Source: Macrostomum lignano (lineage: Eukaryota). From it: 64,000 bases of DNA. Below, piece after piece: positions 7,109 through 31,604 of the stretch. The notes beneath the pieces were generated by a model that worked only from the letters and a program-made list of their open reading frames with translations, had not been told where the DNA came from and did not search any database. The stretch spans positions 1-64,000 of the forward strand of contig NIVC01001279.1 in NCBI GenBank assembly GCA_002269645.1, given 5' to 3'. The position numbers and the translations under genes are program-made. Numbering within the stretch: position 1 is the stretch's first letter; every line of letters begins with the position of its first letter.

Positions 7109-7786
7109 CATTTAAGTTTTAAAATAAGTGTTAGATTTTCAGACCGAATTTAAAACGAATAATGTGAGCACATCAGAGCTAAATCTTATAATCAGATTTA
7201 TATTAGCAGACAATTACAAGTTGCATTATCAAGGACTACTAGACTAGAAGGACGCAACACTTGCAAATCGTGCAAAAATAGTTGAAGGCCGATTATTAAA
7301 ATGTCTGTATTTCCGAATCAATTGCATGTAGAACGTGTCACGTTATTTGATGTTGTCCGTGACCCTTAAAAGGGCCGTTTTAGTCCCAAATGAATCGAGT
7401 CAAGTCTTGATAGCGGATTTGTGTAGCGGAGCACTTGGCACACAAGGCCGGAAGCTGGCCGTAGTTGGTTATTATTGTTGAGATCAATATTCGATGCGGT
7501 TAATATCAATATAGAACTTATTGCGCGTTGGGGCACTGGCGGCTGCAACAATGGTTTTGAATTGAAGGTGAGTTAGAGATTGTAGTCGAGTGGTAGGCGA
7601 GTGATGCAAGACGATGCAACGTGGTGAGTAACGGCGATGAGTACAACAGACGGCGATGAGTACAACAGTGGCTTGACTTACTTACTTGACTTAGCTGCAG
7701 GGCGGTCCGAAGACGCAGCGGGGAGGCGAGCGTCGCCCATTCCGCTAATCCCTGAAAGACCCGCATAGGCTAGGGCGCGGGGCCGG

Positions 7787-10700
7787 TCAGGGAGGTCTGC
7801 CGGTCCTGTCTGCAGCGTTGTCTTCGGTGGGGAAGACGGAGGCTCGCTTGGTGGCCCGGAGGAACCGGATGAGCCGTGGGATGTTCTCGGGCCGGCAAAC
7901 GTCGTCCAGGGACGGGTTGGGCCCGAGGTGGTTGAGCCGGTCTCGGTTGAAGGCCGGGCAGTAGCAGACGAAGTGCATGGCATCTTCATTCTCGAGGCTG
8001 CAGAAGGGGCAGAGTTCACTCCGGCGAACACATCGGAGGAAGCAGTGCCTGGCAAAGCAACCGTGACCTGTGAAGGTCATAGTGAGAGCGCGGATATCTT
8101 TTCGATTTTGATTCAAAAGGATTCTCCGCAGCTTGAGGGACGGATTGGGCACTGCCGCACGAGATTGGCGGCAGTTGGAGATACCATCCCATCTGCGCAA
8201 GTGCAGGATGTCCGCCCAGTCGTTAATCTGACGATTAATGACTGTGGCGGGGATGGGGGCCAGGGGCACGGGGCCAAGGGGCGAGCCGGAACAGCCCGCC
8301 TTAGCGAGGGAGTCGGCGAGCTCGTTACCTTTGAAGCCGGCGTGTCCTGGGATCCACGTGAGCCGGACGGTGTTCCTCCGAGCCAGCTTGTTGAGCTGCC
8401 CGATACAGTCGCGGACTGTTCGGGAGTTCGTAGTGGTGTGACACAGGGCCTGTAAAGCGGCCTGGCTGTCAGAGTGGAAGAAGATTCTTTGTCCTTGAAG
8501 TCCTTGCGGTGGAGCTCAGCTGCACAGGAGCTGATGGCAAGGACTTCATTCTGGAAGACGCTGGAGAGTCTGCCAGTGTGTTGGGCGTGAGTAGCAATCA
8601 CGCGGCCGTTGATAAGGATGCAGACTCCAAAGCCGGATAAACCGTCTTTGGAGGATCCGTCAGTGAAGCAGTGAACCTCCTGAGGGGCCCAGCTGTCGTT
8701 GGCGTTCTCCCTGGAGGGGATCGTGACCTTGAAGCGTTGGTAGAGGTTGAGGGAGCGCGGTTCAGCGTCCGAAAGGACAGCCGCACTCCCACTCTCCTCC
8801 AGAACTTTAAGGCACAGGTCAGAGTGCGGCAGGAGCTTGCGCTTCGCCATCGCTCTTTGTGGCTTGAAGCTAACACCAGCCTCGATGAGCCGGCGGGTGG
8901 TTTTAGCAGCCTCGCGACGGACAAAGATGTCCAGAGGCGGGAGGCAGAGAAAGGCGTTGAGGCCGTCAAAGGGAGCAGAGAGCGGGGCATTCAGGATCAT
9001 GCGGCACGCACGTCCCTGCACCTTTTTGAGGGCTTCGTGGCAGGTTTTAATCTGCAAGGCGCTGGTCCAGACCAGGCCGGCGTATGTAACGGCCGGTCGG
9101 ACCATTGCGGTATAGATCCACCAGAGACGCTTTGGGGTGAGGCCCCAGGTGGTGCCGACGGCTCTGCGCAGCTGCGCAAGAATCGCGAGGGCTTTTTTGG
9201 TTTTGGCCTGGACGTGGGTGGACCAGCTCAGCCGGTGGTCCAGCGTAACGCCGAGACACTTGGTTTGCTTGCAGGATGGAATTTCCACCCGTAAAGCTTT
9301 AGTGGGCGAATACGCCAGTTTACCCTGCTGGTGAACATGATCGCGACAGTTTTGGTCTCGGAGAGCCTGAGGCCGCACCTGTCCGCCCAACGTTCAGCAG
9401 AGCGAATGAAGTTTTGCAAAAGATCTCTAAGGGTTTCAGGTGACGGTCCGGATGCCACGGCTGTGACATCATCGGCGTAACCGACCTTGAGGATGGGGTC
9501 AAGATGGCTGTCCTGGAGGAGCTCATCGATGACCATGTTCCAGAGAACTGGAGAGAGGACACCGCCCTGGGGGCTGCCTTTGCAGACGGTTACCGTCCGT
9601 TGGTGGCCCAACAGGTGTGCGGTGGCAGTACGGTGGCTGATCATATACATGATCCACCGGGTGAGGTGCGAGTGGGTTCCTCTAGCACGTAGAGCTCTGT
9701 CAAAGGCCTCAAAGAGGACATTATCGAAGGCTCCAACAATGTCGAGGAAGACAGCGAGAGCGTAGCCATTACCAAGAACGGCTTTCTCCAGCATGTCAAC
9801 CAGAACGTGAAGCGCGCTCTCCGTGGACCTGCCTGCCCGAAAGGCATGCTGGTTCTCACTGAGCGGCTTGTTCTTCAGTTCCACAGAGAGGAGGCGCCAG
9901 AGCACCAGTCTCTCTAACAGCTTCACCAATGAGGAGGTGAGGCTAATTGGTCTGAAGGATTTAATGGACCGGTAGTCCGGTCGGCCAGGCTTGGGGATAA
10001 AGACCACCTTGGCCTCGGTCCAGGATTTCGGAACAAAGCCGAGCACAATGCAGGCTTTCAGAAGCCGGCAAAGGTTCCGCAGGAAACCGGTGCATTTCAC
10101 CGCCTCCCGCAGGAAGGCTGGCACAACGCCGTCCGGTCCTGGGGATTTGAAGGGTTTGAAGGAGGAGACAGCTTTAGTAACGCGGTCCTCCGTGATGATT
10201 GAGTCAGCCAGTACGTGTCCGCCCACTGAGTGGTCAGGGGGGCCGGGCCTAGCTGGCTCGTTCGGGAAAAACGCTGTTAGCATCGCTTCCAGTGTTTCTC
10301 CTGGGTTCTCAGTGAGCGAGCCGTCGGCTCTCTTGACTGAGGAGAGTTTGGACATTTTGTCCAGGGTGAGGGCTTTAACGATTCTGGAGGTGGGGCGGGA
10401 GCCCTCAAGTTCCTCACAGTATTCGCGCCACTTGTTGGTTTTGGCGTTCCTAACCTGCCTCTTGAACTCGTGGATAGAGTTCAGGTAGGCGGTTTGGTCG
10501 GCCGGGTTTTTAGTTTTTTGGGCCCTGCGGTGAAGCCTTTTGGCTCTGCGACGGAGGTCGCCAAGCTGCGGGTTCCACCATGGGGCCGACTGTTTGCCTT
10601 TATATGCCTTTAGTGGGCATGAGGCTTCGAAGGCAGCAGTGAGCGAGTCCGTAAGTGCGGCCGCAAATTCATCTGCTTCTTCGCAGGTGTTGATGGAGAC

Positions 10701-11488
10701 TGGAGCGCTAGTGCAACGATAGGTCTCCTCCAGGGCAAGCCTGAAGGCGGTCCAGTCGGTATTCCTAGCATTCCGTTTCCAGTAAAGCTGGCCTGCGTTA
10801 CGGGCGCTGGCCAGCGTGAAAGAGATGAACTTGTGATCGGAGAGGGACGCCTCAGGAAGCACCCGCCATTCCCTAGTGCTCTGGAAGAGCCTGGGCGTGG
10901 CGAGGGTGGCATCCAGCACCTCCGATCGGCGTCCGTTATTGAAGGTAGGGGTACTACCCGAGTTACAGAACTCAAGGGTTGTAGTAGCAATATAAGCCAG
11001 GAAGTCTTCACCTCTCTGGTTTATATCAGAACTGCCCCAGTGGGTGTGGTGGGCATTGATGTCACCTGCCACGAGCAGCTCATAGTTTCTGGTGGAGCAG
11101 AGCTCGACCAGTGTGACAAGCTCTACTGGGATCATCTCGCCGTCGCCCGGTAGGTAAACCGAGGCGATGAGGGTAGTCCTCCCAGGGAGTATGTCTTCAG
11201 ACTGGATGACACAGATGTCCCTGGTGGACAGGTCTGATCTGAGCCATGCGTTAATAGAACTGGACACCATGATGCAGGATCTTGGTGCCAGGTTTCCCTC
11301 CCGGGTACCAGCGGTTAAACACTGGTAGCCGGTGGGACATGTTGGGGGCTGCCCCTAAGCGTCCAAGGTTCCTGGATAAGGATAATCCCTGGCACGTATT
11401 GGTCAGTGTGCTTCAAGAGGTTGACTGAAGCAGCAATGCTGTGCTGCAGGTTGACCTGCAAGCAGTGGATGCCCTGGGAGACAGTCAT
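7787..11488 (-). CDS. LINE ORF2: AP endonuclease + reverse transcriptase + RNase H + C-terminal CCHC; three apparent 1-nt deletions (~11344-11348, ~9288-9290, ~8488-8490)
   Basis: APE: QVNLQH, IQEPW, GDINAHH..WGS, SDH. RT: FRPISLTS, QHAFRAGRSTE, GSPQGGVLSP, YADD, KCLGVTLD. RNase H: FTDGS, ELAISS, SDSQAAL, WIPGHAG..GNE.AD. Zn knuckle: CPFC...EDAMHFVCYCP. Restoring one base in each homopolymer gives one continuous ORF from ATG 11488. Confidence 0.93.
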
Positions 11489-11490
11489 GT

Positions 11491-13020
11491 CTACTGTCCA
11501 GGGGAGGAGAAAAGCAACTCATTCTCAGCCTCATCGGTGAGAGTTGAGTCGCCAATTTCCATTGGCTCAGGCTCAGCCGCCTCCCCAGCCGCCGCGGAGG
11601 CGGACACGGCGCCCACGGCAGGTGAGTCACCTAGCCGCGCTACACCGCCCTCCTCCCCAGCGACTGGGGTACGGCTGCTGCCTTCGCCTTGCGCCCCGCC
11701 GTCGGGAGTCTGAGCTCGGCCGGCAGCGTCCTCCTGGTGGTAATCCCACCAGTTGGAAGGCTGAGCCGTGCCGTCGTCCAGTTCCCTCGGCTGGCTTTCA
11801 GTGTTTTTTCGAGCGGCACGAGTCTGCTCGAGGTGAAGTCTCAGAGACTGAGCTTCGTCAAGTGCGCGCTGGATTAGACCGGACCGCCGGCTACTGCGGG
11901 CGGGTCTACGTCCGCGCGAGGCGGACTCAGCAGCGCGAATAGCCTTGTTAGGCTCGGGATCGGGTTGCTGCTGCCGCTTGGCCGGCGGGGCATGAGCCCC
12001 AGCTCCGGGAGCGGCGCGCTTCCCGTCTTTCTTGGTCTCCACCTTGCCCTCCTCACAGCGGAGGATGGTCAGTTGATGGAGACCAAGGTGGAGGTTTGTG
12101 CCGTGCGGTAGCCGCTTGGCCCATCCCTCCGTCAGGCCGAGGATGACTGTGGCCCCGGTCGTGCCCTTGCGGACCGTGCTGTGGTACACAAGACCACTGG
12201 CGTCGAGATCCGGGTGCCGCTTGAGCAGGAGCTGCCGCAGCTGCTCCCCGGACTTGATTGCACTGTCGGCCGGGACCCAAATCCGATGGCGGATGGTCTT
12301 CGGCCGCTCGCTCTCCAAGGCGAAGGTCAGCTGGCCCAGGTCGCTGTGCCAGTCGAACTTGGGCAGCTGATCCCGCAGGAGCTGGGTGCTCTCCTCGGAT
12401 TTGCACCACAGTAGGATGCACCCGTTCGCCTTGGTGGACTTGACGATGTCCACGAAGACGCCCTCCAGGGTTAGATTGAGCAAGCCCTCGTCGATGGTAC
12501 GCCACGCGACGTCGAGCTGCTCGGGCGTCAGGTCGAAATCCCCGCCGAGGATCATCACGGCGGGTTGCAGCGGCTGCTTGACCTTGGACGCGTAGGACTC
12601 GGAGGTCTTGAGCGGGGCCGCTTTGTCTTTGGAAGGCGGTAGGCCGGCAGGGTTGCCCCCCTGAGAGCCCGAGGACACGGCGGTTCCTGACGGCCCAGCC
12701 GCGCCACCGGACTCCCCAGAGGGCCTCCCCGCTGCGGTGGCTCCCGAAGGCCTCACCGCGGCTTGCGTGCCCTCCTCAGACGCAGCAGCAGCCCGCTTCT
12801 CCTGCCGCTTACGGTTGCGGCGGATGTTCCGCTGTCGTCGAGACTCGGCCGTGCGCGGTCGGCTAGACTGGCGGCCAGGGTGATCGGCGGCAGCGTCAGC
12901 TGGCCCGGTTGGACCAGGTTGGGCGTTGGTGCTACCAGTGGTAGCTACCGGAGCGGCTGATCCCGGTGAGCCAGAGGCGACCGGGTCAGTTTCTTTAGGG
13001 ATGGTGGCGTTAGTGGCCAT
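11491..13020 (-). CDS. LINE ORF1 (gag-like, 509 aa) with basic/low-complexity N-terminus and a DUF4780-like central domain; no CCHC knuckles
   Basis: Intact ORF directly upstream of ORF2. The segment NGCILLWCKSEESTQLL...IWVP...LL...P.L...G..L..G resembles LOA-clade ORF1 proteins (recognition only). Confidence 0.8.
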   Translation of the reverse strand: MATNATIPKETDPVASGSPGSAAPVATTGSTNAQPGPTGPADAAADHPGRQSSRPRTAESRRQRNIRRNRKRQEKRAAAASEEGTQAAVRPSGATAAGRPSGESGGAAGPSGTAVSSGSQGGNPAGLPPSKDKAAPLKTSESYASKVKQPLQPAVMILGGDFDLTPEQLDVAWRTIDEGLLNLTLEGVFVDIVKSTKANGCILLWCKSEESTQLLRDQLPKFDWHSDLGQLTFALESERPKTIRHRIWVPADSAIKSGEQLRQLLLKRHPDLDASGLVYHSTVRKGTTGATVILGLTEGWAKRLPHGTNLHLGLHQLTILRCEEGKVETKKDGKRAAPGAGAHAPPAKRQQQPDPEPNKAIRAAESASRGRRPARSSRRSGLIQRALDEAQSLRLHLEQTRAARKNTESQPRELDDGTAQPSNWWDYHQEDAAGRAQTPDGGAQGEGSSRTPVAGEEGGVARLGDSPAVGAVSASAAAGEAAEPEPMEIGDSTLTDEAENELLFSSPGQ

Positions 13021-13271
13021 AGCTGAAAAGCGGGGGAGGGCTACTCGTTATGCGAGTTGAGTACCCGACTGGCCGACACCTCAAGCCAGCCGGTTTGAAA
13101 AAAGGACCGCTAGCGACCGGACTACTCCCCGGCCTTCCAGCCCATCGGCACGGTCAAACACCTTAGGCATTAGAGGGTACGTTAAGCAGTACCACGGCCT
13201 GCAGGCTGGTGAGCCAGACCCGCATACCCAAATTCGGCCGAAGCCACTGGATAGGGTCGCCAGCGCCGGAG

Positions 13272-13510
13272 CCCAGTCTGTCCAGCAGCCCTAGGGTCTG
13301 CCTTGAACACACGCGGGGACGAGTACCCCTGGGTCGACTTGCGAGACAGCGTGGGGGAGTCTGCGGCTGCCAGAGGCAAATAGAGGGTGCAGACCTCCCA
13401 CCAGCCTTGACCTGCTGAAGATGGGGGCAGGCGTGAAGCATCGCAGACCTTAGCTCGTAGGCCTAGTCTGTCTCATACTTCACTGGCATGCTGAATACGC
13501 CTTCGCGTGC
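13272..13510 (-). ncRNA. HDV-like self-cleaving ribozyme at the exact 5' end of the LINE
   Basis: Minus strand: P1 GCACGCG (13510-13504) pairs with CGCGUGU (13315-13309; G1.U wobble). P2 CCCAG (13333-13329) pairs with CUGGG (13276-13272). P3 GGG (13328-13326) pairs with CCC (13318-13316). L3 is UACUCGU. P1.1 is AC/GU (13308-13307). P4 spans 13306-13281. J4/2 is C-A-G-A with the putative catalytic C at 13280. Confidence 0.85.
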
Positions 13511-14726
13511 TACAACAGTGGCAGATGCGTAGTGGTGAGATTGGCGTTAGCCGTGGCAGACAGTGGCAGGCTGGCCCAGACAGAGAGAAGGAAAACAAGG
13601 CCGCGAAGGGACGGCAGAACGAAAGGAAGAAAGACAGAAAGGAAGAAAGACAGAAAGGAAGGAAGGAAGGAAGGGAGGGTGAAAAACCAGCCCGCTGCCA
13701 GACGGGGGGTTTAATAAAGGAGCGCAGAGGGGGGGGGCGCGAAGCACGAGCGGTTTTCATTGGCTGGCGAGAGAACTTAAAATTATCGATCGTGCCAATT
13801 TTATACGGTCGCGAGAGAGGATAGCAAAATATACAGTGAATTAGAAATTGCCACAAAATCGTTGGGCCCTACTATAAGTAAACGTTAAAATAAACTATTG
13901 GAGAAATTAATATGAGAAATTACAAGGGAAAATATAGTCCAGCGGCCCTTTTCGGGACCACCTTAAACTGACAACGTCACAAACGTTAATTTTTTCGACA
14001 GATTGTTCCATTGTTCCTACCAAGTAAGCCTACCAAGATGAAGATGCGAGAAAATCCTGTACAATGGAGTCACCCTATTTTTGGGCGTATGGTAGCTATT
14101 CAAATCTTCAAGTTTAGGAAGCAAAATTAATAAAGTAGAGCCGAAAATCTTGAGCGCATTTTTTGTGAATACGCTCTTAGTTTCATTAGTGACGTTTCTG
14201 AAAATATATCGGAATCTGGAGATCATATACAGAACCCGCATAATTTGGTCTATATCCTTTAAATCTCTCACAAGATGGCCAGTCAGAAAAAATGAGAGAG
14301 AAGAAAAAGCCAAACATCACAAAAGCAGACTCCTGTTTTAACATTCTGTTCTTAGAATTCTCAGAATTCTCAGACAGATAAACAACTGTCTGTCTGGCAC
14401 AAAATTGGAGGTATGATAAACTGTATTGAGCAAATTTTATTGTCTGTCGAACAGTGTTGCAAAGTGACGAAACGGTAGAGAACAAAGAAAATGGAAAAAG
14501 TAAATAACAAATTCATGCAAATGAACTCAAATTATTTGCAATGCACAAAAATTCTTTTAACAAATTTGGTATAGTAAAAGAGTGGTTCATAAACAGTGTT
14601 GGGATCATGTGTACAAATGGTACATGTATATGCTGACAAACCATAAACATTAAAATCAAATTTAGGAAGCATATAACGAAGTGTTCCTAGTGTGGTCCTA
14701 GTGGTCCTTGTTCCAAAAGCGCAGCT

Positions 14727-17694: not shown

Positions 17695-19730
17695 TCCCCA
17701 ATTCCCTGTCCCCTGTCCTCAATCCCCTGTCCACTGTCCTCAATCCCCTGTCCCCAATCCCCTGTCCCCTGTCCCCAATCCCCTGTCCCCTGTCCCCAAT
17801 CCCCAATCCCCTGTCCTCAATCCCCTGTCCACTGTCCTCAATCCCCTGTCCACTGTCCTCAATCCCCTGTCCCCAATCCCCTGTCCTCAATCCCCTGTCC
17901 CCTGTCCCCAATCCCCTGTCCTCAATCCCCCGTCCTCAATCCCCTGTCCCCTGTCCTCTGTCCCCAATCCCCTGTCCTCACTCCCCCGTCCTCAATCCCC
18001 TGTCCCCTGTCCTTAATCACCTGTCCTCAATCCCCTGTCCTCAATCCCCTGTCCTCAATCCCCTGTCCCCAATCCCCTGTCCCCTGTCCCCAATCCCCTG
18101 TCCCCTGTCCCCGATCCCCTGTCCCCTGTCCTCAATCCCCTGTCCACTGTCCTCAATCCCCTGTCCCCAATCCCCTGTCCTCAATCCCCTGTCCCCTGTC
18201 CTCTGTCCCCAATCCCCTGTCCTCAATCCCCTGTCCTCAATCCCCTGTCCCCAATCCCCTGTCCCCTGTCCCCAATCCCCAATCCCCTGTCCTCAATCCC
18301 CTGTCCACTGTCCTCAATCCCCTGTCCACTGTCCTCAATCCCCTGTCCCCAATCCCCTGTCCTCAATCCCCTGTCCCCTGTCCCCAATCCCCTGTCCTCA
18401 ATCCCCCGTCCTCAATCCCCTGTCCCCTGTCCTCTGTCCCCAATCCCCTGTCCTCACTCCCCCGTCCTCAATTCCCTGTCCCCTGTCCTCAATCCCCTGT
18501 CCACTGTCCTCAATCCCCTGTCCTCAATCCCCTGTCCACTGTCCTCAATCCCCTGTCCACTGTCCTCAATCCCCTGTCCCCAATCCCCTGTCCTCAATCC
18601 CCTGTCCCCTGTCCCCAATCCCCTGTCCTCAATCCCCCGTCCTCAATCCCCTGTCCCCTGTCCTCTGTCCCCAATCCCCTGTCCTCACTCCCCCGTCCTC
18701 AATCCCCTGTCCCCTGTCCTTAATCACCTGTCCTCAATCCCCTGTCCTCAATCCCCTGTCACCTGTCCCCTGTCCTTAATCCCCTGTCTCCTGTCCTCAA
18801 TCCCCTGTCCCCTGTCCTCAATCCCCTGTCCCCAATCCCCTGTCCCCTGTCCCCAATCCCCTGTCCCCTGTCCCCGATCCCCTGTCCCCTGTCCTCAATC
18901 CCCTGTCCACTGTCCTCAATCCCCTGTCCCCAATCCCCTGTCCTCAATCCCCTGTCCCCTGTCCTCTGTCCCCAATCCCCTGTCCTCAATCCCCTGTCCT
19001 CAATCCCCTGTCCCCTGTCCCTTGTCCCCAATTCCCTGTCCTCAATCCCCCGTCTTCAATCCCCTGTCCCCTGTCCTTAATCACCTGTCCTCAATCCCCT
19101 GTCCTCAATCCCCTGTCACCTGTCCCCTGTCCTTAATCCCCTGTCCCCAATCCCCTGTCCTCAATCCCCCGTCCTCAACCCCCTGTCCCCTGTCCCCAAT
19201 CCCCTGTCCTCAATCCCCTGTCCCCAATCCCCTGTCCTCAATCCCCCGTCCCCTGTCCTCAATCCCCTGTCCACTGTCCTCAATCCCCTGTCACCTGTCC
19301 CCTGTCCTCAATCCCCTGTCCCCTGTCCTCAATTCCCTGTCCCCCGTCCCCTGTCCTCAATCCCCTGTCCACTGTCCTCAATCCCCTGTCCTCAATCCCC
19401 TGTCACCTGTCCCCTGTCCTCAATCCCCTGTCCCCTGTCCTCAATTCCCTGTCCCCTGTCCCCTGTCCTCAATCCCCTGTCCCCAATCCCCTGTCCTCAA
19501 TCCCCTGTCCTCAATCCCCTGTCCCCTGTCCCCTGTCCCCAATCCCCTGTCCCCAATCTCCTGCCTCAATCTCCAATCCCCAATCCCCTACCTCAATCCT
19601 TTATCCCCAATCCCCTGCCTCAATCCTTTATCCCCAATCCCCTGCCTCAATCCTTTATCCCCAATCCCCTACCTCAATCCTTTATCCCCAATCCCCTGCC
19701 TCAATTCTTTATCCCCAATCCCCTGCCTGA
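17695..19730. repeat. ~2-kb C-rich satellite built from 7-mers CCCCTGT/CCTCAAT/CCCCAAT, between Ly6 copies A and B
   Basis: Direct reading; the long ORFs here are repeat artefacts. Confidence 0.93.
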
Positions 19731-20033
19731 ATTTTTGCCAAATCAGATTGGTGTTTTATAGGTTGAAAACTTATGGCTGCCTGCAATGAATCGGTGTATT
19801 TGATAACCAATCCAAGAATAACTAAGCAAACCGAAGTGTACGAGTAAAAAGCAGCGTCGCTTTAAAGAGGAACAAAATTAGAGCACATTAGTGTTGGATA
19901 TACTCGTATACGTAGCTGGAAGTTGAGGCGCACTGCTCGTTGCAGCATGTATAGCAAATCATTATGTTGCTTTTTCAGTGAGCAAAGTACGAGCGTACAT
20001 ATTTCTGCTTCAGGGGGTTCCAGAAGCGCAGCT

Positions 20034-23000
20034 TCAGAGCCGCTTCATCAGTGCCAGCAGGAAGGCGGCAGCAACGATGAACTGGCAGCCCCCCAGACTG
20101 CAGGCAGAGTTGCAGTAGTCTGTGCTGCAGCTGCGGCAGTTCGTGTCGGGGTACCGAGTGCAGTCTCCGCAGCCTGCAAAGAACACCTGCAATGGCGAAT
20201 GTTGGCTCTGGTTTTGTGGTGACGCAATGGGGTTGTGACACTAATTGAGACACTGTCTAACAGGATGATTGAGACACTGTCTAACAGGATGATTGAGACA
20301 CTGTCTAACAGGATGATTGAGACACTGTCTAACAGGATTATTGAGACACTGTCTAACAGGATTATTGAGACACTGTCTAACAGGATGATTGAGACACTGT
20401 CTAACAGGATTATTGAGACTCTGTCTAACAGGATGATTGAGACACTGTCTAACAGGATTATTGAGACACTGTCTAACAGGATGATTGAGACTCTGTCTAA
20501 CAGGATGATTGAGACACTGTCTAACAGGATGATTGAGACACTGTCTAACAGGATGATTGAGACTCTGTCTAACAGGATCATTGAGACACTGTCTAACAGG
20601 ATTATTGAGACACTGTCTAACAGGATTATTGAGACACTGTCTAACAGGATGATTGAGACACTGTCTAACAGGATGATTGAGACACTGTCTAACAGGATCA
20701 TTGAGACACTGTCTAACAGGATTATTGAGACACTGTCTAACAGGATTATTGAGACACTGTCTAACAGGATTATTGAGACACTGTCTAACAGGATGATTGA
20801 GACACTGTCTAACAGGATGATTGAGACACTGTCTAACAGGATGATTGAGACACTGTCTAACAGGATGATTGAGACACTGTCTAACAGGATTATTGAGACA
20901 CTGTCTAACAGGATTATTGAGACACTGTCTAACAGGATGATTGAGACACTGTCTAACAGGATGATTGAGACACTGTCTAACAGGATGATTGAGACACTGT
21001 CTAACAGGATTATTGAGACTCTGTCTAACAGGATTATTGAGACACTGTCTAACAGGATTATTGAGACTCTAACAGGATGATTGAGACACTGTCTAACAGG
21101 ATTATTGAGACTCTAACAGGATGATTGAGACACTGTCTAACAGGATTATTGAGACTCTAACAGGATGATTGAGACACTGTCTAACAGGATTATTGAGACT
21201 CTAACAGGATGATTGAGACACTGTCTAACAGGATGATTGAGACACTGTCTAACAGGATTATTGAGACTCTAACAGGATGATTGAGACACTGTCTAACAGG
21301 ATTATTGAGACTCTAACAGGATTATTGAGACTCTAACAGGATTATTGAGACACTGTCTAACAGGATTATTGAGACTCTGTCTAACAGGATTATTGAGACA
21401 CTGTCTAACAGGATTATTGAGACTCTAACAGGATGATTGAGACACTGTCTAACAGGATTATTGAGACTCTAACAGGATGATTGAGACACTGTCTAACAGG
21501 ATTATTGAGACTCTGTCTAACAGGATGATTGAGACACTGTCTAACAGGATTATTGAGACTCTAACAGGATGATTGAGACACTGTCTAACAGGATGATTGA
21601 GACACTGTCTAACAGGATTATTGAGACTCTAACAGGATGATTGAGACGCTGTCTAACAGGATTATTGAGACACTGTCTAACAGGATTATTGAGACACTGT
21701 CTAACAGGATGATTGAGACACTGTCTAACAGGATTATTGAGACTCTAACAGGATGATTGTGACACTGTCTAACAGGATGATTGTGACACTGTCTAACAGG
21801 ATGATTGAGACACTGTCTAACAGGATTATTGAGACTCTAACAGGATGATTGAGACACTGTCTAACAGGATGATTGAGACACTGTCTAACAGGATTATTGA
21901 GACACTGTCTAACAGGATGATTGAGACACTGTCTAACAGGATTATTGAGACTCTAACAGGATGATTGTGACACTGTCTAACAGGATGATTGTGACACTGT
22001 CTAACAGGATGATTGAGACACTGTCTAACAGGATTATTGAGACTCTAACAGGATGATTGTGACACTGTCTAACAGGATGATTGTGACACTGTCTAACAGG
22101 ATGATTGAGACTCTAACAGGATTATTGAGACTCTGTCTAACAGGATGATTGAGACACTGTCTAACAGGATGATTGAGACACTGTCTAACAGGATTATTGA
22201 GACTCTGACAGGATGATTGTGACACTGTCTAACAGGATGATTGTGACACTGTCTAACAGGATGATTGAGACTCTAACAGGATGATTGAGACTCTGTCTAA
22301 CAGGATGATTGAGACACTGTCTAACAGGATTATTGAGACTCTGTCTAACAGGATGATTGAGACACTGTCTAACAGGATTATTGAGACACTGTCTAACAGG
22401 ATGATTGAGACACTGTCTAACAGGATTATTGAGACACTGTCTAACAGGATTATTGAGACACTGACTAACAGGATGATTGTGACACTGTCTAACAGGATTA
22501 TTGAGACACTGTCTAACAGGATTATTGAGACTCTGTCTAACAGGATGATTGAGACACTGTCTAACAGGATTATTGAGACTCTGTCTAACAGGATGATTGA
22601 GACACTGTCTAACAGGATGATTGAGACACTGTCTAACAGGATCATTGAGACACTGTCTAACAGGATTATTGAGACACTGTCTAACAGGATCATTGTGACA
22701 CTGTCTAACAGGATTATTGAGCCACTGTCTAACAGGATGATTGAGACACTGTCTAACAGGATGATTGAGACTCTGTCTAACAGGATGATTGAGACACTGT
22801 CTAACAGGATTATTGAGACTCTGTCTAACAGGATTATTGAGACTCTGTCTAACAGGATTATTGAGACACTGTCTAACAGGATTATTGTGACACTGTCTAA
22901 CAGGATGATTGAGACTCTGTCTAACAGGATGATTGAGACACTGTCTAACAGGATTATTGAGCCACTGTCTAACAGGATGATTGAGACACTGTCTAACAGG

Positions 23001-26000
23001 ATGATTGAGACACTGTCTAACAGGATTATTGAGACTCTGTCTAACAGGATTATTGAGACACTGTCTAACAGGATTATTGAGACTCTAACAGGATGATTGA
23101 GACACTGTCTAACAGGATTATTGAGACTCTAACAGGATGATTGAGACACTGTCTAACAGGATTATTGAGACTCTAACAGGATGATTGAGACACTGTCTAA
23201 CAGGATGATTGAGACTCTGTCTAACAGGATGATTGAGACACTGTCTAACAGGATGATTGAGACACTGTCTAACAGGATGATTGAGACACTGTCTAACATG
23301 ATTATTGAGACACTGTCTAACAGGATGATTGTGACACTGTCTAACAGGATGATTGAGACTCTGTCTAACAGGATTATTGAGACACTGTCTAACAGGATTA
23401 TTGAGACTCTAACAGGATGATTGAGACACTGTCTAACAGGATTATTGAGACTCTAACAGGATGATTGTGACACTGTCTAACAGGATGATTGTGACACTGT
23501 CTAACAGGATGATTGAGACACTGTCTAACAGGATGATTGAGACACTGTCTAACAGGATGATTGAGACACTGTCTAACAGGATGATTGAGACACTGTCTAA
23601 CAGGATGATTGTGACACTGTCTAACAGGATGATTGTGACACTGTCTAACAGGATGATTGAGACACTGTCTAACAGGATTATTGAGACACTGTCTAACAGG
23701 ATTATTGAGACTCTGTCTAACAGGATTATTGTGACACTGTCTAACAGGATTATTGAGCCACTGTCTAACAGGATGATTGAGACACTGTCTAACAGGATGA
23801 TTGAGACACTGTCTAACAGGATGATTGAGACACTGTCTAACAGGATTATTGAGACACTGTCTAACAGGATTATTGAGACTCTGTCTAACAGGATTATTGA
23901 GACTCTGTCTAACAGGATTATTGAGACTCTGTCTAACAGGATTATTGAGACACTGTCTAACAGGATTATTGAGACTCTAACAGGATGATTGAGACACTGT
24001 CTAACAGGATTATTGAGACTCTGTCTAACAGGATGATTGAGACACTGTCTAACAGGATTATTGAGACTCTAACAGGATGATTGAGACACTGTCTAACAGG
24101 ATTATTGAGACTCTGTCTAACAGGATGATTGAGACACTGTCTAACAGGATTATTGAGACTCTAACAGGATGATTGAGACACTGTCTAACAGGATTATTGA
24201 GACACTGTCTAACAGGATTATTGAGACTCTAACAGGATGATTGAGACACTGTCTAACAGGATTATTGAGACTCTAACAGGATGATTGAGACACTGTCTAA
24301 CAGGATTATTGAGACTCTAACAGGATGATTGAGACACTGTCTAACAGGATTATTGAGACTCTAACAGGATGATTGAGACACTGTCTAACAGGATTATTGA
24401 GACTCTAACAGGATGATTGAGACACTGTCTAACAGGATTATTGAGACTCTAACAGGATGATTGAGACACTGTCTAACAGGATTATTGAGACTCTAACAGG
24501 ATGATTGAGACACTGTCTAACAGGATTATTGAGACTCTAACAGAATGATTGAGACACTGTCTAACAGGATGATTGAGACTCTGTCTAACAGGATGATTGA
24601 GACACTGTCTAACAGGATGATTGAGACTCTGTCTAACAGGATGATTGAGACACTGTCTAACAGGATTATTGAGACACTGTCTAACAGGATTATTGAGACT
24701 CTGTCTAACAGGATGATTGTGACACTGTCTAACAGGATTATTGAGACTCTAACAGGATGATTGAGACACTGTCTAACAGGATCATTGAGACACTGTCTAA
24801 CAGGATGATTGAGACACTGTCTAACAGGATTATTGAGACTCTGTCTAACAGGATCATTGAGACACTGTCTAACAGGATGATTGTGACACTGTCTAACAGG
24901 ATGATTGTGACACTGTCTAACAGGATGATTGAGACACTGTCTAACAGGATTATTGTGACACTGTCTAACAGGATTATTGAGACTCTGTCTAACAGGATTA
25001 TTGTGACACTGTCTAACAGGATTATTGAGCCACTGTCTAACAGGATGATTGAGACACTGTCTAACAGGATTATTGAGACTCTGTCTAACAGGATGATTGA
25101 GACACTGTCTAACAGGATTATTGAGACTCTAACAGGATGATTGAGACACTGTCTAACAGGATGATTGTGACACTGTCTAACAGGATGATTGTGACACTGT
25201 CTAACAGGATGATTGAGACACTGTCTAACAGGATTATTGAGACACTGTCTAACAGGATTATTGAGACTCTGTCTAACAGGATTATTGTGACACTGTCTAA
25301 CAGGATTATTGAGCCACTGTCTAACAGGATGATTGAGACACTGTCTAACAGGATGATTGAGACACTGTCTAACAGGATGATTGAGACACTGTCTAACAGG
25401 ATGATTGAGACACTGTCTAACAGGATGATTGAGACACTGTCTAACAGGATGATTGAGACACTGTCTAACAGGATGATTGAGACACTGTCTAACAGGATTA
25501 TTGAGACACTGTCTAACAGGATTATTGAGACTCTGTCTAACAGGATTATTGAGACTCTGTCTAACAGGATTATTGAGACTCTGTCTAACAGGATTATTGA
25601 GACACTGTCTAACAGGATTATTGAGACTCTAACAGGATGATTGAGACACTGTCTAACAGGATTATTGAGACTCTGTCTAACAGGATGATTGAGACACTGT
25701 CTAACAGGATTATTGAGACTCTAACAGGATGATTGAGACACTGTCTAACAGGATTATTGAGACTCTGTCTAACAGGATGATTGAGACACTGTCTAACAGG
25801 ATTATTGAGACTCTAACAGGATGATTGAGACACTGTCTAACAGGATTATTGAGACACTGTCTAACAGGATTATTGAGACTCTAACAGGATGATTGAGACA
25901 CTGTCTAACAGGATTATTGAGACTCTAACAGGATGATTGAGACACTGTCTAACAGGATTATTGAGACTCTAACAGGATGATTGAGACACTGTCTAACAGG

Positions 26001-28034
26001 ATTATTGAGACTCTAACAGGATGATTGAGACACTGTCTAACAGGATGATTGAGACTCTGTCTAACAGGATGATTGAGACACTGTCTAACAGGATTATTGA
26101 GACACTGTCTAACAGGATTATTGAGACTCTGTCTAACAGGATGATTGAGACACTGTCTAACAGGATTATTGAGACTCTAACAGGATGATTGAGACACTGT
26201 CTAACAGGATCATTGAGACACTGTCTAACAGGATGATTGAGACACTGTCTAACAGGATTATTGAGACTCTAACAGGATGATTGAGACACTGTCTAACAGG
26301 ATCATTGAGACACTGTCTAACAGGATGATTGAGACTCTGTCTAACAGGATTATTGAGACTCTGTCTAACAGGATGATTGAGACACTGTCTAACAGGATGA
26401 TTGAGACACTGTCTAACAGGATGATTGAGACTCTGTCTAACAGGATGATTGAGACTCTGTCTAACAGGATGATTGAGACACTGTCTAACAGGATGATTGA
26501 GACACTGTCTAACAGGATTATTGTGACACTGTCTAACAGGATGATTGAGACACTGTCTAACAGGATTATTGTGACACTGTCTAACAGGATTATTGAGCCA
26601 CTGTCTAACAGGATGATTGAGACACTGTCTAACAGGATGATTGAGACACTGTCTAACAGGATGATTGAGACACTGTCTAACAGGATGATTGAGACACTGT
26701 CTAACAGGATTATTGTGACACTGTCTAACAGGATGATTGAGACACTGTCTAACAGGATGATTGAGACACTGTCTAACAGGATGATTGAGACACTGTCCAA
26801 CAGGTGTGTAACAGTTCCAGTAAAACGGCCCTGACCAGTGAACTCACTTGAGTAGTTCCAACGCTGCTGCTGTACTTGTAGCAGGTGAGTGTGCTGCAAT
26901 TTATTTTTGTTCTACTAGAGTGAAAATAACTGTCAAAGCTGTGGTAGCAGTTCACAGTTGGCGGCCGAGTGTTGCAGTAGTCTGTTGAGCAAGTCGTGCA
27001 TAGGGAAGCGATGTGGTAGTAGTGCGTGCAGTCGCCGCATCCGCCATAGTTGTACTGTAGACATTTTTGGTGGGAAAGCATACTCGTATTTGTTAGGTAG
27101 AGTCAGAGCATTACTTTAGTTATTCTGTTAGTTTAGAGTTCTTGATGGGGTCTTTAACTAGTTCATAAACCGGGTCCTCAATAGAATCCTTAATCAGGTT
27201 TTTAAAAGGGTTCTTAATATCGGGCCCTCAATAAGGTCTTGAATCGGGTCCTCAACAGGTGATAGATCCAGGATCCCGAATCTAGTTCGGAATCGGTTCC
27301 ACAATCGCGTCTTTAATTGAGTCCTCAATCAGGTCCTTAATTGGGTCCTTAATTGCAGGATCCTCAATCAGGTCCTTAATTGGGTCCTTAATCAGGTTCT
27401 CACTTATATGTAGGTCTTCAATATGTTAGGTTGATGAATGTACATGTAAATGCTGATGTCTCATTGACCGTTATAGTCTTGAAAGCAAATCCGCTATAAA
27501 ATTTCAAGCTTACGGATTTGTAATTGTACGAGTAGCAGTACCACCGAGAACTGAGACAAGTTGTTTCAGTGCCGTTGGAATAAGGTGAAGTTGAGGCTGA
27601 CCGAGTGTAGCAGCTGAGCGGCGTTGCGGGACTCGCTGTGGGAGATAGTGTCTTAGTGTCTGTCTGTCTCTGTTTGTGTCATAAATATGTGTCTGTCTGT
27701 CTATGTTTGTGTCATAAATATGTGTCTGTCTGTCTATGTTTGTGTCATAAATATGTGTCTGTCTGTCTATGTTTGTGTCATAAATATGTGTCTGTCTGTC
27801 TCTGTTTGTGTCATAAATATGTGTCTGTCTGTCTATGTTTGTGTCATAAATATGTGTCTGTCTGCTGTCTATCTGCTTGTCTGTCTGTCTGTCTATTAGT
27901 ATGTTTGTCTGTTAGTCTGTCTGTCTGCTTGTCTGTCTGTCTGCTTGTCTGTCAGTCCGCCAATCAATCAATACGCCAGCCTTACCAAATATGGCAAGCA
28001 GAGCTACAGCGCAGACCAGATCGCAGTGAGCCAT
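20034..28034 (-). CDS. Ly6/uPAR-like two-domain GPI-anchored protein (copy B); exons 28034-27986, 27635-27514, 27054-26848, 20186-20034
   Basis: Same exon phases as copy A and the same 122-nt exon 2 and 153-nt exon 4. MAHCDLVCAVALLAIF-A..LSCY..C..C|YNYGGCGDC..CTTCSTDYCN..NCY..C..CY|VFFAGCGDC..CN + hydrophobic tail. Confidence 0.85.
20240..26805. repeat. ~6.6-kb satellite of 24-bp (TTGAGACACTGTCTAACAGGATGA) and 20-bp (TTGAGACTCTAACAGGATGA) units filling intron 3 of Ly6 copy B
   Basis: Direct reading. The 24+20 units alternate in patches. A rare GAGCCACTG variant recurs at ~22721, 22961, 23757, 25029, 25313 and 26597. Confidence 0.96.
27645..27955. repeat. 33-bp unit (TGTCTGTCTGTCTATGTTTGTGTCATAAATATG) plus (TGTC)n in intron 1 of Ly6 copy B
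   Basis: Direct reading. Confidence 0.88.
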
Positions 28035-29921: not shown

Positions 29922-31604
29922 TTATTGTTGCTGTTGTTCTTGTCTTTGTTGTTGTTGCTGCTGCTGCTGTTGATCATTCTGTCTAATAGCATCAACAGCA
30001 TTTCGAATCGACCATCTTTGCAGGATGTCGGGCAGCTCAAAATGATGAAAGAAATAAATCATAGAGTGCTGGATGAACAACCAGCTAGTGGTTAGTGCCA
30101 GGCCACTGTACTGACCGTTGAACCGGTAGTAGTAAGCGTAGAACCCAGCATGGTACAAGAAGAAGAACCTTGGCCAATGCCGCCTGGTAACGCTAGTATG
30201 GCACAACAGCGCCAAGAACTGATCGGATATCCAAATAATTATAATGACGTAAAATGCCGTAGAAGAGTCCGTAAAGAAATCGCTCATTATAGTTTCCATG
30301 CCAACTAGGCCTAATATGATGGTTAATAGCTGGGCTACGGGCAGATTAGGCGGCCTCAGAGTGGTATTAAACTCTAATCGGTGAAGCAAATCCGCAATGA
30401 ATAGGAATATCTGATGATGCGAATACCTAAGCAGCATAGATATGCACAGGGTGAATATAATCATAATAAACGCCGACGGCAGATAGCTGCTTCTACTCAT
30501 CCAAACGTTTACAAAGCGAAACTGATCACCCGTCACAACATTGCGCACGAAGCCTTTGTCACCAGCCTCTGCAAGGCGCTTCAAACTGGCCAATAGCAGA
30601 TCGTTGTAGCCTAGAAACTCTTCTAGTAGAAACCTGCTGAACCCGTTGCCAAAGCAGGTGTGATTATTAGGATCCAGGATTACTAACTGGACAGGAATGT
30701 TGAGATTTTTTCTAGTCACAGGCGACAGCTTCAAGAAGCCGTATTCTAGCGAGTATTCAATAATATGCTTCTCGCGTGGAAATACCAGATTAGCAAACAG
30801 TTCCAGCTCTGTTAGTGTCTCGCGAAACGGTTGCAAAGCTTTGTCTGTGTTAACATTAGCGCTGGCTACTAGATAGTCAAACAGGTAGCTAATAGTGTCA
30901 CCTGAACTAGCGTCTGAATTGTTGGAGGATGAATTATTATTAATAATCCCATTGCCACCTGTTGGATACCGAAAATTCGGCTGCTTATAAACGCTACCAA
31001 CTGGAGAATAGTACATGGCTAACAATTCGGCAATACTGGGTGAGTTGCACTGTTGAGTAGCAGCATGAGCTGATGCTTGAGCACGGCTGGCTTGAGAACC
31101 AGGTGAAACCTGCTGCTGCCGCTGAGGACTATGATATTGAATCAGTTGGGCAGCGCTGAACTCTTTGTGATAAGACTGATTCAGATCGTAACCAACCGGT
31201 GCGCTTTTGATTACTTCAACTCGTAGCACACCATTTCTAGGCCAAGTAGCAATGAGATCGTCCATGCAGGTGACGGGCGCTTTCACGAAGATCAAGTGCA
31301 CATACATAAGTATCATTAGTGCCGCTACGGCCACTACTAAAAGTACAAATTCTATGAATCTTCGAGCCGGCGACGGGAAAGCGCTAGCGTAGATGACGCA
31401 CAATCGATGGAGAAAGAATTCGAATAGTTGATCGCGTTCAGCGTTGTTAACAACTGCGGCTGCGGCTGCGGCGGCTGGTGGAGGAGGCGGCGGAGGCGGA
31501 GGTGGCGGAGGAGGGGGTTGAGCAGGCGGAGGTGGCTGAGGCGACGCCGCTGCAGCTCCTAACGCATTTTCTGTCGCTTCTGATGGAGCGACAGAGTCTG
31601 TCAT
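29922..31604 (-). CDS. TMEM259: Membralin (ER membrane ERAD factor), single exon, with N-terminal poly-P/poly-A and C-terminal poly-Q
   Basis: Recognisable blocks: RDQLFEFFLHRL..YA..FP...RRFIEF, IIEYSLEYGFLKLSP.TR..LNIPV..V.LDP....CFG..FSRFLL..FLGY.D.L, SMLLRYSH.QIF, HWPRFFFLYH..FYAYYYRFNGQYSGLAL.TSWLFIQHSMIYFFHHFELP. First ATG at 31604. Confidence 0.93.
   Translation of the reverse strand: MTDSVAPSEATENALGAAAASPQPPPPAQPPPPPPPPPPPPPPAAAAAAAVVNNAERDQLFEFFLHRLCVIYASAFPSPARRFIEFVLLVVAVAALMILMYVHLIFVKAPVTCMDDLIATWPRNGVLRVEVIKSAPVGYDLNQSYHKEFSAAQLIQYHSPQRQQQVSPGSQASRAQASAHAATQQCNSPSIAELLAMYYSPVGSVYKQPNFRYPTGGNGIINNNSSSNNSDASSGDTISYLFDYLVASANVNTDKALQPFRETLTELELFANLVFPREKHIIEYSLEYGFLKLSPVTRKNLNIPVQLVILDPNNHTCFGNGFSRFLLEEFLGYNDLLLASLKRLAEAGDKGFVRNVVTGDQFRFVNVWMSRSSYLPSAFIMIIFTLCISMLLRYSHHQIFLFIADLLHRLEFNTTLRPPNLPVAQLLTIILGLVGMETIMSDFFTDSSTAFYVIIIIWISDQFLALLCHTSVTRRHWPRFFFLYHAGFYAYYYRFNGQYSGLALTTSWLFIQHSMIYFFHHFELPDILQRWSIRNAVDAIRQNDQQQQQQQQQRQEQQQQ

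What the first reader, a model, noticed from the sequence alone, without database searches (positions are those of the whole stretch)
13272..13510. Complete HDV-like ribozyme whose predicted cleavage site is the first base of the LINE
Seen: G13510, the base adjoining the TSD, starts P1 (GCACGCG/CGCGUGU with the hallmark G1.U wobble). A compact core follows ~170 nt later: P2 CCCAG/CUGGG, P3 GGG/CCC, L3 UACUCGU keeping the U..G pair, P1.1 changed from the usual CC/GG to AC/GU (compensatory), a P4 hairpin, and J4/2 C-A-G-A fitting C-N-R-A. Established: HDV-like ribozymes process 5' ends of R2, RTE, L1Tc and Baggins (LOA) retroelements and leave a 5'-OH. Inference: this element self-excises from longer transcripts. 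I know of no description of this particular ribozyme or family but cannot confirm novelty.
Basis: partly seen in the sequence, partly recalled or inferred. Interest (0 to 1): 0.9.

Follow-up and report, generated by a model that had tools for sequence, protein, structure and literature searches.

The report
HDV-like ribozyme heading a flatworm LINE
The first ~246 bases of a retrotransposon in this flatworm (Macrostomum) DNA fold like the self-cutting HDV-type RNA enzyme, placed to trim the element's transcript exactly at its first base; this is a known strategy of such elements, seen here in a family where it has apparently not been described.

Summary
The element is a full-length 5.84-kb LINE (minus strand, 13510→7673) flanked by an exact 12-bp target-site duplication, so G13510 is its first base. 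A published-criteria HDV descriptor hits only this site in the window. No match starting at nucleotide 1 arose in 20,000 shuffles of the 5' UTR.

The decisive evidence is comparative. An exhaustive ORF1 profile search identified the host as Macrostomum lignano or a close relative and yielded three sister lineages. Across four lineages, P2 and P4 covary, P3 is invariant, and L3 keeps U…C-G-U. The catalytic C is invariant. P1.1 is doubly compensated in L131. In the one sister whose contig reaches the 5' end, nucleotides 1-6 again pair with the strand right after P3, with a different sequence.

Caveats: nothing is tested biochemically, and Rfam models do not match. Two sisters lack the canonical C-N-R-A J4/2. 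A competing helix (P1 3' strand with J4/2) may coexist.

Verdict: a genuine HDV-like 5'-processing ribozyme fold, and a new member of a known kind.

The parts
7673..13510 (-). Full-length LOA-like LINE (non-LTR retrotransposon), 5,838 bp. It has ORF1 and an APE-RT-RNaseH-type ORF2, and a short (TAAG/TCAAG)n 3' tail at 7673-7693.
   Evidence: TSD; Pfam Exo_endo_phos_2 + RVT_1; homology to RNase H-bearing ORF2s; sequence.
13511..13522 (-). 5' copy of the target-site duplication GCCACTGTTGTA.
   Evidence: Exact 12-mer occurs only twice in the window, 0.02 expected.
7661..7672 (-). 3' copy of the target-site duplication.
13504..13510 (-). P1 5' strand GCACGCG (element nt 1-7). The predicted scissile bond is 5' of G13510.
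   Evidence: 7 bp with 13315-13309, -10.4 kcal/mol. L131 has a different but complementary terminal P1.
13339..13503 (-). J1/2 peripheral domain (nt 8-172): several hairpins closed on themselves.
   Evidence: Folds as a closed multi-branch domain. Hairpins conserved with L131, 8/37 pairs doubly changed. Precedent for long J1/2 in PMC3774820 and PMC4908430.
13335..13338 (-). P2 extension, 5' strand GUCG (nt 173-176).
   Evidence: Pairs with 13268-13265 CGGC. G[U/C]CG/CGGC in all four lineages.
13329..13333 (-). P2 5' strand CCCAG (nt 178-182).
   Evidence: Pairs with 13276-13272. Five of six P2 pairs covary across lineages.
13326..13328 (-). P3 5' strand GGG.
   Evidence: Invariant GGG/CCC in four lineages.
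13319..13325 (-). L3 UACUCGU. Positions 2-3 (A13324, C13323) form P1.1.
   Evidence: U1, C5, G6 and U7 invariant in four lineages. The L3 C and G are required for R2 ribozyme activity (PMC3774820).
13316..13318 (-). P3 3' strand CCC.
13309..13315 (-). P1 3' strand CGCGUGU (nt 196-202).
   Evidence: Also able to pair with J4/2 in an alternative helix.
13307..13308 (-). P1.1 3' nucleotides GU.
   Evidence: A-U and C-G with L3. L131 has CU/AG, so both pairs are doubly changed.
13281..13306 (-). P4 hairpin.
   Evidence: In the MFE and centroid; the five outer pairs have probability 0.46-0.99, the two loop-proximal pairs 0.05. A stable hairpin of different sequence in each lineage.
13277..13280 (-). 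J4/2 CAGA. C13280 is the predicted general-acid cytosine.
   Evidence: The C is invariant in four lineages. C-N-R-A is kept in the window and L132, not in L001 (CGUG) or L131 (CUGC).
13272..13276 (-). P2 3' strand CUGGG.
13265..13268 (-). P2 extension, 3' strand CGGC.
11491..13020 (-). ORF1 (509 aa), intact.
   Evidence: About 95% identical outside one deletion to M. lignano UniRef100_A0A1I8FVG9.
7829..11285 (-). ORF2 (APE, RT, RNase H-like, Cys-rich C-terminus), broken into three frames by shifts near 9286 and 8490-8510.
   Evidence: tblastn against intact relatives; Pfam.

Best explanation
Element nt 1-246 (window 13510-13265, minus strand) encode an HDV-like self-cleaving ribozyme with a large structured J1/2 insert. 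The element has no demonstrated promoter of its own, so the inferred route is read-through transcription from upstream.

Inferred order of events: the 5'-terminal 7 nt are made first. The ~165-nt J1/2 domain then folds on itself and brings its two ends together. When the P2-P3-L3-P3'-P1' segment emerges, P1 forms with nt 1-7, P1.1 forms between L3 and the two nt after P1', P4 folds, and P2 closes. C13280 in J4/2 then acts as the general acid and the chain is cut 5' of G13510. This leaves a 5'-OH RNA that starts exactly at the element's first base. That RNA is the template for target-primed reverse transcription, which explains why the TSD abuts G13510.

Shown here: the fold, its position, its conservation and its covariation. 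Inferred: catalysis, co-transcription, and any additional IRES-like or protein-binding role of the 5' UTR. This particular copy is coding-dead (two ORF2 frameshifts).
For: 1) Exact anatomy and TSD junction.
2) Sole descriptor hit in the window; 0/20,000 shuffles with P1 at nt 1; 0/113 natural sites sharing the core string complete the fold.
3) The nested helices appear in the unconstrained MFE, with P2/P2ext/P3 and the five outer P4 pairs at probability 0.46-0.99 except the P3-adjacent P2 pair (0.01). Forcing P1+P3+P4 costs 11.5 kcal/mol, about what the freed P2 duplex returns (-10.8).
4) A covariance model built from the window and L001 only finds the cores of L132 (E 1e-6) and L131 (E 2e-5), upstream of ORF1 on the sense strand, and nothing else.
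5) On that alignment 95.9% of cells pair, against 28-50% when partners are slid. 11/23 pairs are doubly changed, against 0-1 slid. 0/500 shuffles reach the observed value on four of five measures.
6) P1.1 is AC/GU in the window and CU/AG in L131. L3 U..CGU and the J4/2 C are invariant.
7) Terminal P1 is GCACGCG/CGCGUGU in the window and GCCUGC/GCAGGC in L131, with two compensatory pairs plus a matched 1-nt indel. In L131, nt 1 is the only 6/6 match upstream. Cognate duplexes are -10.4/-13.6 against -3.0/-5.5 when swapped.
8) Precedent: R2, R4, Dong, Baggins and L1Tc cleave at or near the element's 5' end; J1/2 ranges from 23 to more than 700 nt; structured J1/2 domains activate large HDV-like ribozymes (PMC3774820, PMC6765202, PMC4908430).
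Against: There is no biochemical or RNA-end evidence.

Rfam's HDV-family covariance models give no hit even on the bare core at E up to 10.

J4/2 is CGUG in L001 and CUGC in L131, lacking the constrained A, although both lineages have intact ORFs. P1.1 has a U.U mismatch in L001 and L132.

An alternative helix pairs the 3' half of P1' plus the P1.1 nucleotides with J4/2, including the catalytic C. It appears in the MFE and in RNAalifold's consensus with two compensatory changes. It is the best cognate partner in 4/4 cross-lineage rows, though the individual shuffle p-values are only 0.06-0.37.

The 5' termini of L001 and L132 are missing. More distant LOA-like cousins show no such fold. Folding z-scores are unremarkable.
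Confidence: 0.75

Rival explanations
1. A conserved but non-catalytic 5' UTR structure. The selected fold would be a nested three-way junction (P2 closing, P3 hairpin, long P4 extended by P1'-J4/2 pairing) that serves translation initiation, ORF-protein binding or RNA stability. The 5' end would be set by an internal promoter, and pairing of the terminus with P1' would serve end protection or packaging, not cleavage.
For: The extended-P4 (Alt) helix is in the MFE and in the RNAalifold consensus with two compensatory changes. Cognate Alt pairing is best in 4/4 lineages. J4/2 is non-canonical in two lineages with intact ORFs. There is no Rfam match. The rest of the UTR is also conserved, including a 30-nt invariant block. 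L1Tc shows that promoter and ribozyme functions, and non-catalytic conformers, can coexist in a LINE 5' UTR (PMC3185411).
Against: It does not explain the doubly compensated P1.1 pseudoknot, the invariant L3 U/C/G/U and J4/2 C at exactly the HDV positions, or why the P1 partner is the very first nucleotide in two lineages with different sequences. The Alt helix is individually non-significant against shuffles and is weaker than P1 in the window (-8.8 vs -10.4).
Confidence: 0.17
2. The true P1 is internal: a compact ribozyme using nt ~164-170, just before P2, which would cleave about 164 nt inside the element. The terminal complementarity would then be secondary, perhaps a relic of a 5' duplication.
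For: In L001 the internal GCUCGC pairs 6/6 with P1' (-11.5 kcal/mol, shuffle p 0.014). The 5' terminus resembles the internal segment: CGCGAAG vs CGCAAG in the window, CUGCAA in both places in L131.
Against: In the window the internal segment pairs only 4/6 (-2.8 kcal/mol), and cognate pairing is not consistently the best across lineages. The TSD-bounded copy and the L131 contig both begin at nt 1, and the upstream ~165 nt are conserved between lineages. Efficient internal cleavage would remove that region from the retrotransposed RNA.
Confidence: 0.05
3. A chance resemblance to the HDV motif in a GC-rich UTR.
For: Decoy descriptors (C to A/G/U) give about 0.7 hits per window, so motif matches as such are common. 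Loose descriptors give many hits.
Against: 0/20,000 shuffles place P1 at nt 1. The fold is independently recovered with covariation in three other lineages.
Confidence: 0.01

Closest known systems
R2 retrotransposon HDV-like ribozymes (arthropods, planarian, birds and others)
   Same: A 5'-UTR double-pseudoknot ribozyme that releases the element RNA from a co-transcript. It has a long, partly conserved J1/2 (216-498 nt in silkmoths, up to more than 700 nt), a long P2, a variable P4, conserved C and G in L3, and a catalytic C (PMC3774820).
   Different: R2 is a site-specific, single-ORF, restriction-like-endonuclease element in 28S rDNA, and it often cleaves upstream at -28. The present element is an APE-type, two-ORF, LOA-like LINE inserted in minisatellite-rich DNA, with the predicted cut exactly at nt 1.
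Baggins (LOA-clade) and RTE HDV-like ribozymes (Ruminski et al. 2011, J Biol Chem 286:41286; summarised in PMC6765202)
   Same: An APE-type LINE with a 5'-terminal HDV-like ribozyme that cleaves at the element's 5' end. The nearest named ORF2 relative here is the LOA-clade element Lian-Aa1.
   Different: I could not read the primary paper (not held) or compare sequences. ORF2 identity to insect LOA-like elements is only ~33-38%. My descriptor found no such fold in the five LOA-like cousin loci I could fetch. The host is a flatworm, and the J1/2 is ~165 nt.
L1Tc ribozyme (Trypanosoma cruzi)
   Same: An HDV-like ribozyme at nt +1 of a LINE. Downstream or alternative pairings switch it into a non-catalytic conformer, and it has a proposed dual role with translation and promoter functions (PMC3185411).
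   Different: L1Tc's ribozyme is a compact 77 nt with no long J1/2. It belongs to a different clade (ingi/L1Tc) and a different host kingdom.
drz-Agam-2 family with a P1.2 peripheral domain
   Same: A structured J1/2 whose closing helix 'pinches' P1 and P2 together and accelerates cleavage (PMC4908430). J1/2 here closes on itself and is conserved.
   Different: The J1/2 here is much larger and multi-branched. Its activating role is only inferred.

Membership tests
HDV-like self-cleaving ribozymes | Nested double pseudoknot in the order P1-J1/2-P2-P3-L3-P3'-P1'-P1.1-P4-J4/2-P2', with P3' abutting P1' and P2 abutting P3. | tested here: met
   Descriptor hit. The same order is seen in four lineages. 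Model-based alignment and pair counts agree.
HDV-like self-cleaving ribozymes | P1 of 6-7 bp beginning at the cleavage-site nucleotide (G1, usually a G.U wobble). | tested here: met
   The window has 7 bp with G13510.U13309. L131 has 6 bp with G1-C. There are two compensatory pairs between them.
HDV-like self-cleaving ribozymes | P1.1 mini-helix between L3 and the nucleotides following P1'. | tested here: met
   Window A-U + C-G; L131 C-G + U-A (both doubly changed); L001 and L132 C-G + U.U.
HDV-like self-cleaving ribozymes | Conserved L3 nucleotides: the C and G required for activity, and the 5' U. | tested here: met
   L3 is U-N-N-N-C-G-U in all four lineages. The requirement is taken from PMC3774820.
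HDV-like self-cleaving ribozymes | Catalytic cytosine as the first nucleotide of J4/2. | tested here: met
   C13280 and its homologue are invariant in four lineages.
HDV-like self-cleaving ribozymes | Constrained A at the end of J4/2 (C-N-R-A). | tested here: inconclusive
   Met in the window (CAGA) and L132 (CUGA). Not met in L001 (CGUG) or L131 (CUGC).
HDV-like self-cleaving ribozymes | Mg2+-dependent self-scission giving 5'-OH and 2',3'-cyclic phosphate, abolished by the catalytic C-to-U change. | not testable with these tools
   Needs in vitro transcription and cleavage assays.
Rfam HDV-family covariance models (HDV, CPEB3, drz-* families) | A score at or near a family's gathering threshold. 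| tested here: not met
   No HDV-family hit at E up to 10 on the window, the 361-nt region, the bare core, or L001's core. This counts against homology to a curated family, not against the fold.
LOA-clade non-LTR retrotransposons | APE + RT + RNase H ORF2, a separate ORF1, and phylogenetic placement with LOA/Lian/Baggins. | tested here: inconclusive
   APE and RT are found by Pfam. RNase H is present in the intact sister L131 and in relatives. ORF1 shows a weak DUF4780 signal. The closest named relative is Lian-Aa1-like at 37% identity. No phylogeny was built.

The most novel reading that the evidence does not exclude
The family is a natural two-state HDV-like ribozyme. The P1 3' strand alternates between the 5' terminus (active fold) and J4/2 including the catalytic C (inactive extended P4). 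Sister lineages with J4/2 = CGUG or CUGC would still cleave. That would show that the 'constrained A' of J4/2 is dispensable in nature, and that descriptor searches requiring C-N-R-A systematically miss active HDV-like ribozymes.
Probability: 0.2. Interest if true: 0.6.

Novelty: new member of a known kind. Interest (0 to 1): 0.45.

Why it matters
HDV-like ribozymes are an established way for promoter-less LINEs to define their own 5' end. This finding adds an APE-type, LOA-like family from a free-living flatworm (Macrostomum), a regeneration model whose genome is dominated by repeats.

It comes with a ready-made four-lineage covariation set and a large conserved J1/2 domain. It also offers natural J4/2 variants that could test how strict the C-N-R-A rule is.

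Practically, it gives exact 5' boundaries for annotating this repeat family. That matters because several M. lignano gene models in UniProt have swallowed its ORFs.

Tried and rejected
- Rfam scans at gathering threshold and at E up to 10, on the whole window, the region and the bare core: no HDV-family hit.
- A loose home-made descriptor was too permissive: 15 cores in the window and dozens in unrelated UTRs. I dropped it in favour of published criteria with decoy controls.
- The word-index protein search with ORF1, whole or as the conserved domain, found only one relative. The exhaustive HMMER search was needed.
- Exact-pattern DNA scans of the metagenome, genome and viral collections with a conserved UTR block found nothing. 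A protein-pattern scan of metagenome contigs also found nothing.
- A scan with the 17-nt core returned only chance matches in GC-rich bacteria. I reused these as a negative control.
- L004, L130 and L133 do not reach the ribozyme. P0123 has no contig on record.
- The LOA-like cousins L002, L003, L127, L128 and L129 show no HDV-like fold, so I could not show a clade-wide trait or obtain a positive control for the descriptor.
- MAFFT on 'mini' constructs misaligned the core by one column. I replaced it with a covariance-model alignment.
- The primary papers by Webb et al. 2009 and Ruminski et al. 2011 are not held.

Full report
**Observation.**
- G13510 opens GCACGCG, which pairs over 7 bp (G.U first) with CGCGUGU at 13315-13309.
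- About 170 nt later come CCCAG (P2), GGG (P3), UACUCGU (L3), CCC (P3'), the P1 3' strand, and GU (pairing with A-C of L3 as P1.1).
- These are followed by a 26-nt hairpin (P4), CAGA (J4/2, C13280) and CUGGG (P2').
- I add a 4-bp extension of P2 (13338-13335 with 13268-13265).

The 12-mer GCCACTGTTGTA occurs exactly twice, at 13511-13522 and 7661-7672, with 0.02 expected. Between the two copies lies a 5,838-bp element. It has an intact ORF1 and an ORF2 carrying APE and RT domains. It has a short TAAG/TCAAG-type tail. ORF2 carries two frameshifts. The bases following the two TSD copies differ, so G13510 is unambiguously the element's first base.

**Is it more than chance?** I wrote a descriptor from published criteria (PMC3774820, PMC10879173):
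- P1 of 7 bp and P2 of at least 5 bp.
- P3 of 3 Watson-Crick pairs.
- L3 of 7-8 nt with C-G at fixed positions.
- P1.1 of 2 bp.
- J4/2 of C-N-R-A.
- J1/2 of up to 400 nt.

It hits only this site in both strands of the window. Decoys with the catalytic C replaced give 1, 1 and 0 hits, so a motif match alone is not significant. In context it is. Only 4 of 20,000 dinucleotide shuffles of the 511-nt UTR gave any hit, and none gave one with P1 at nt 1. Among 113 unrelated genomic sites that share the identical 17-nt P3-L3-P3'-P1' string, none completed the fold.

Thermodynamically, P2, its extension, P3 and most of P4 appear in the unconstrained MFE with high pairing probabilities. Forcing P1+P3+P4 costs 11.5 kcal/mol, about what the freed P2 duplex returns. 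Folding z-scores are unremarkable.

**Relatives.** The word-index protein search found a single ORF1 relative. This is L001, which is the same element as L004 (ORF2 78% and ORF1 47% identical to the window). Its contig starts about 90 nt into the element.

An exhaustive HMMER search with the ORF1 profile then gave two things. The first was UniProt entries of Macrostomum lignano, one with an ORF1 about 95% identical to the window's outside one deletion. That identifies the host as M. lignano or a close relative, consistent with the window's density of minisatellites. The second was Logan contigs L131 and L132.
- L131 has intact ORF1 and ORF2, with ORF2 62% identical to the window.
- L132 has an intact ORF1; only the start of its ORF2 lies on the contig.

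L131 nt 33-73 align with element nt 33-73, so that contig starts at the homologue of nt 1.

**Comparative test.** Parsed by hand, the four lineages compare as follows.

| Part | Window | L001 | L131 | L132 |
|---|---|---|---|---|
| P2 | CCCAG/CUGGG | CCCAAA/UUUGGG | CUCAGA/UCUGAG | CCUCAGA/UCUGAGG |
| L3 | UACUCGU | UUCUCGU | UCUCCGU | UUCCCGU |
| P1.1 | AC/GU | UC/GU | CU/AG | UC/GU |
| J4/2 | CAGA | CGUG | CUGC | CUGA |

- P3 is GGG/CCC in all four, and the P2 extension is G[U/C]CG/CGGC in all four.
- L3 positions U1, C5, G6 and U7 are invariant.
- In P1.1, both pairs are doubly changed in L131; L001 and L132 have U.U plus C-G.
- P4 is a stable hairpin of different sequence in each lineage (-9 to -25 kcal/mol).

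To avoid hand-fitting, I built a covariance model from the window and L001 only, using nested helices only. It found L132 (35.9 bits, E 1e-6) and L131 (31.7 bits, E 2e-5) full-length, on the sense strand upstream of ORF1. It found nothing else in the window or in five LOA-like cousin loci.

On the resulting alignment, with P1.1 added as a pseudoknot, 95.9% of cells pair, against 28-50% when partners are slid by 1-3 columns. Eleven of 23 pairs are doubly changed, against 0-1 in the slid controls. No shuffle out of 500 reached the observed value on four of the five measures (6/500 for further pair types). Two caveats apply: there are only four lineages, and the alignment was fitted to the nested helices.

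**P1 and the 5' terminus.** In L131 the first six nucleotides, GCCUGC, are the exact complement of GCAGGC immediately after P3'. Compared with the window this gives two compensatory pairs (A-U to C-G, C-G to U-A). It also gives a matched indel: G7 and C196 are present together in the window and absent together in L131.

Nucleotide 1 is the only 6/6 match in the 164 nt upstream of L131's core. In the window it is the best of two, and the only one that extends to 7 bp. The per-position chances are about 0.003 and 0.009. Cognate P1 duplexes are -10.4 and -13.6 kcal/mol, against -3.0 and -5.5 when the partners are swapped.

**Complications.**
- J4/2 keeps only its C. It is CAGA (window) and CUGA (L132), but CGUG (L001) and CUGC (L131), so two lineages lack the 'constrained A'.
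- RNAalifold on the window and L001 pairs the 3' half of P1' plus the P1.1 nucleotides with J4/2, including the catalytic C. Two compensatory changes support this, and the helix is also in the window's own MFE.
- Across lineages each cognate Alt duplex is the best in its row, but shuffle p-values are only 0.06-0.37. In the window it is weaker than P1 (-8.8 vs -10.4).
- In L001 an internal segment (GCUCGC, just before P2) pairs 6/6 with P1' (p about 0.01). This is not seen consistently elsewhere.
- Rfam's curated HDV-family models do not match even the bare core.
- More distant LOA-like cousins show no such fold.

I read the Alt helix as a plausible inactive conformer, comparable to the catalytic/non-catalytic switching reported for L1Tc (PMC3185411). 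It does not replace the ribozyme fold, because it explains neither P1.1 covariation, nor the L3 invariants, nor the terminal P1.

**The J1/2 insert.** It folds as a closed multi-branch domain. Between the window and L131 its hairpins and closing pairs are conserved, with 8 of 37 predicted pairs doubly changed. This fits the activating peripheral domains of large HDV-like ribozymes (PMC4908430) and the long, functionally required J1/2 of R2 ribozymes (PMC3774820).

**Comparison with what is known, and novelty.** HDV-like ribozymes at LINE 5' ends are established for R2, R4/Dong, Baggins, RTE and L1Tc (PMC3774820, PMC6765202, PMC3185411). The nearest named ORF2 relative here is the LOA-clade Lian-Aa1. 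The held literature has no paper linking Macrostomum with HDV-like ribozymes.

This is therefore a new member of a known kind. Its distinguishing points are the flatworm host, the ~165-nt conserved J1/2, the natural non-C-N-R-A J4/2 variants in sister lineages, and a possible two-state arrangement.

**Verdict.** Confidence that this is a functional (or recently functional) HDV-like 5'-processing ribozyme fold is about 0.75. Catalysis itself is untested.

Noticed in passing
window 13108-13137 (minus strand); L001 365-394; weaker in L131 ~455-470, L132 ~283-310, L133 ~255-285: A 30-nt block of the 5' UTR (GGCCGGGGAGTAGTCCGGTCGCTAGCGGTC), about 130 nt downstream of the ribozyme, is identical between the window and L001 although ORF1 is only 47% identical. 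Recognisable versions occur in the other lineages. Its function is unknown; translation or protein binding are possibilities.
   Followed up: partly
L001 76-81 vs 109-114: In the L001 lineage an internal segment just before P2 (GCUCGC) is a perfect 6-bp partner for the P1 3' strand (-11.5 kcal/mol, shuffle p ~0.01). The element's 5' terminus resembles this internal segment in the window and in L131. This hints at a past duplication or shift of the cleavage site, as modelled for R2.
   Followed up: partly
window 9286 and 8490-8510 (minus strand): ORF2 of this copy runs through three reading frames (two frameshifts). The copy is full-length with a TSD but not autonomous.
   Followed up: yes
window 7631-7668: The insertion site lies in a perfect 19-nt tandem duplication (CTGTTGTACTCATCGCCGT x2 on the minus strand) that overlaps the 3' TSD copy. 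A (GAAA/GGAA)n microsatellite sits about 100 nt upstream of the element at 13616-13674.
   Followed up: no
whole window, e.g. 20244-26804 (24-nt unit x 281), 17695-19732, 34106-35265, 41578-43206: The window is packed with dozens of different minisatellite arrays of 20-60-nt period, some with extreme GC skew. This is consistent with the repeat-rich Macrostomum genome.
   Followed up: no
window 29922-31628 (-), 40704-41537 (-), 57393-58094 (+): Three host genes appear as long uninterrupted ORFs: membralin (Pfam E 1.6e-125), a CRAL-TRIO protein and a RhoGEF. Large single exons suggest intron-poor genes.
   Followed up: partly
UniProt M. lignano entries found (P0123, P0125, P0126, P0131, P0133, P0137, P0151): Several M. 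lignano gene models contain this LINE family's ORF1-like segment. They are named RNase H domain-containing (3,935 aa), DUF4780 domain-containing, protocadherin-16-like, fibrinogen C-terminal, ankyrin-repeat and others. These are probably TE-contaminated gene predictions.
   Followed up: no
L002 ~220-530; L133 1-210: The 5' UTRs of a distant cousin (L002) and of another ORF1 relative (L133) contain tandem duplications of roughly 80-110 nt. 5' UTR repeats seem common in these elements.
   Followed up: no
L001 nt 1 and L132 nt 1: Two independent contigs from different lineages both begin at about the homologue of element nt 90. This may be an assembly break at a variable 5' segment or a common 5'-truncation point.
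   Followed up: no
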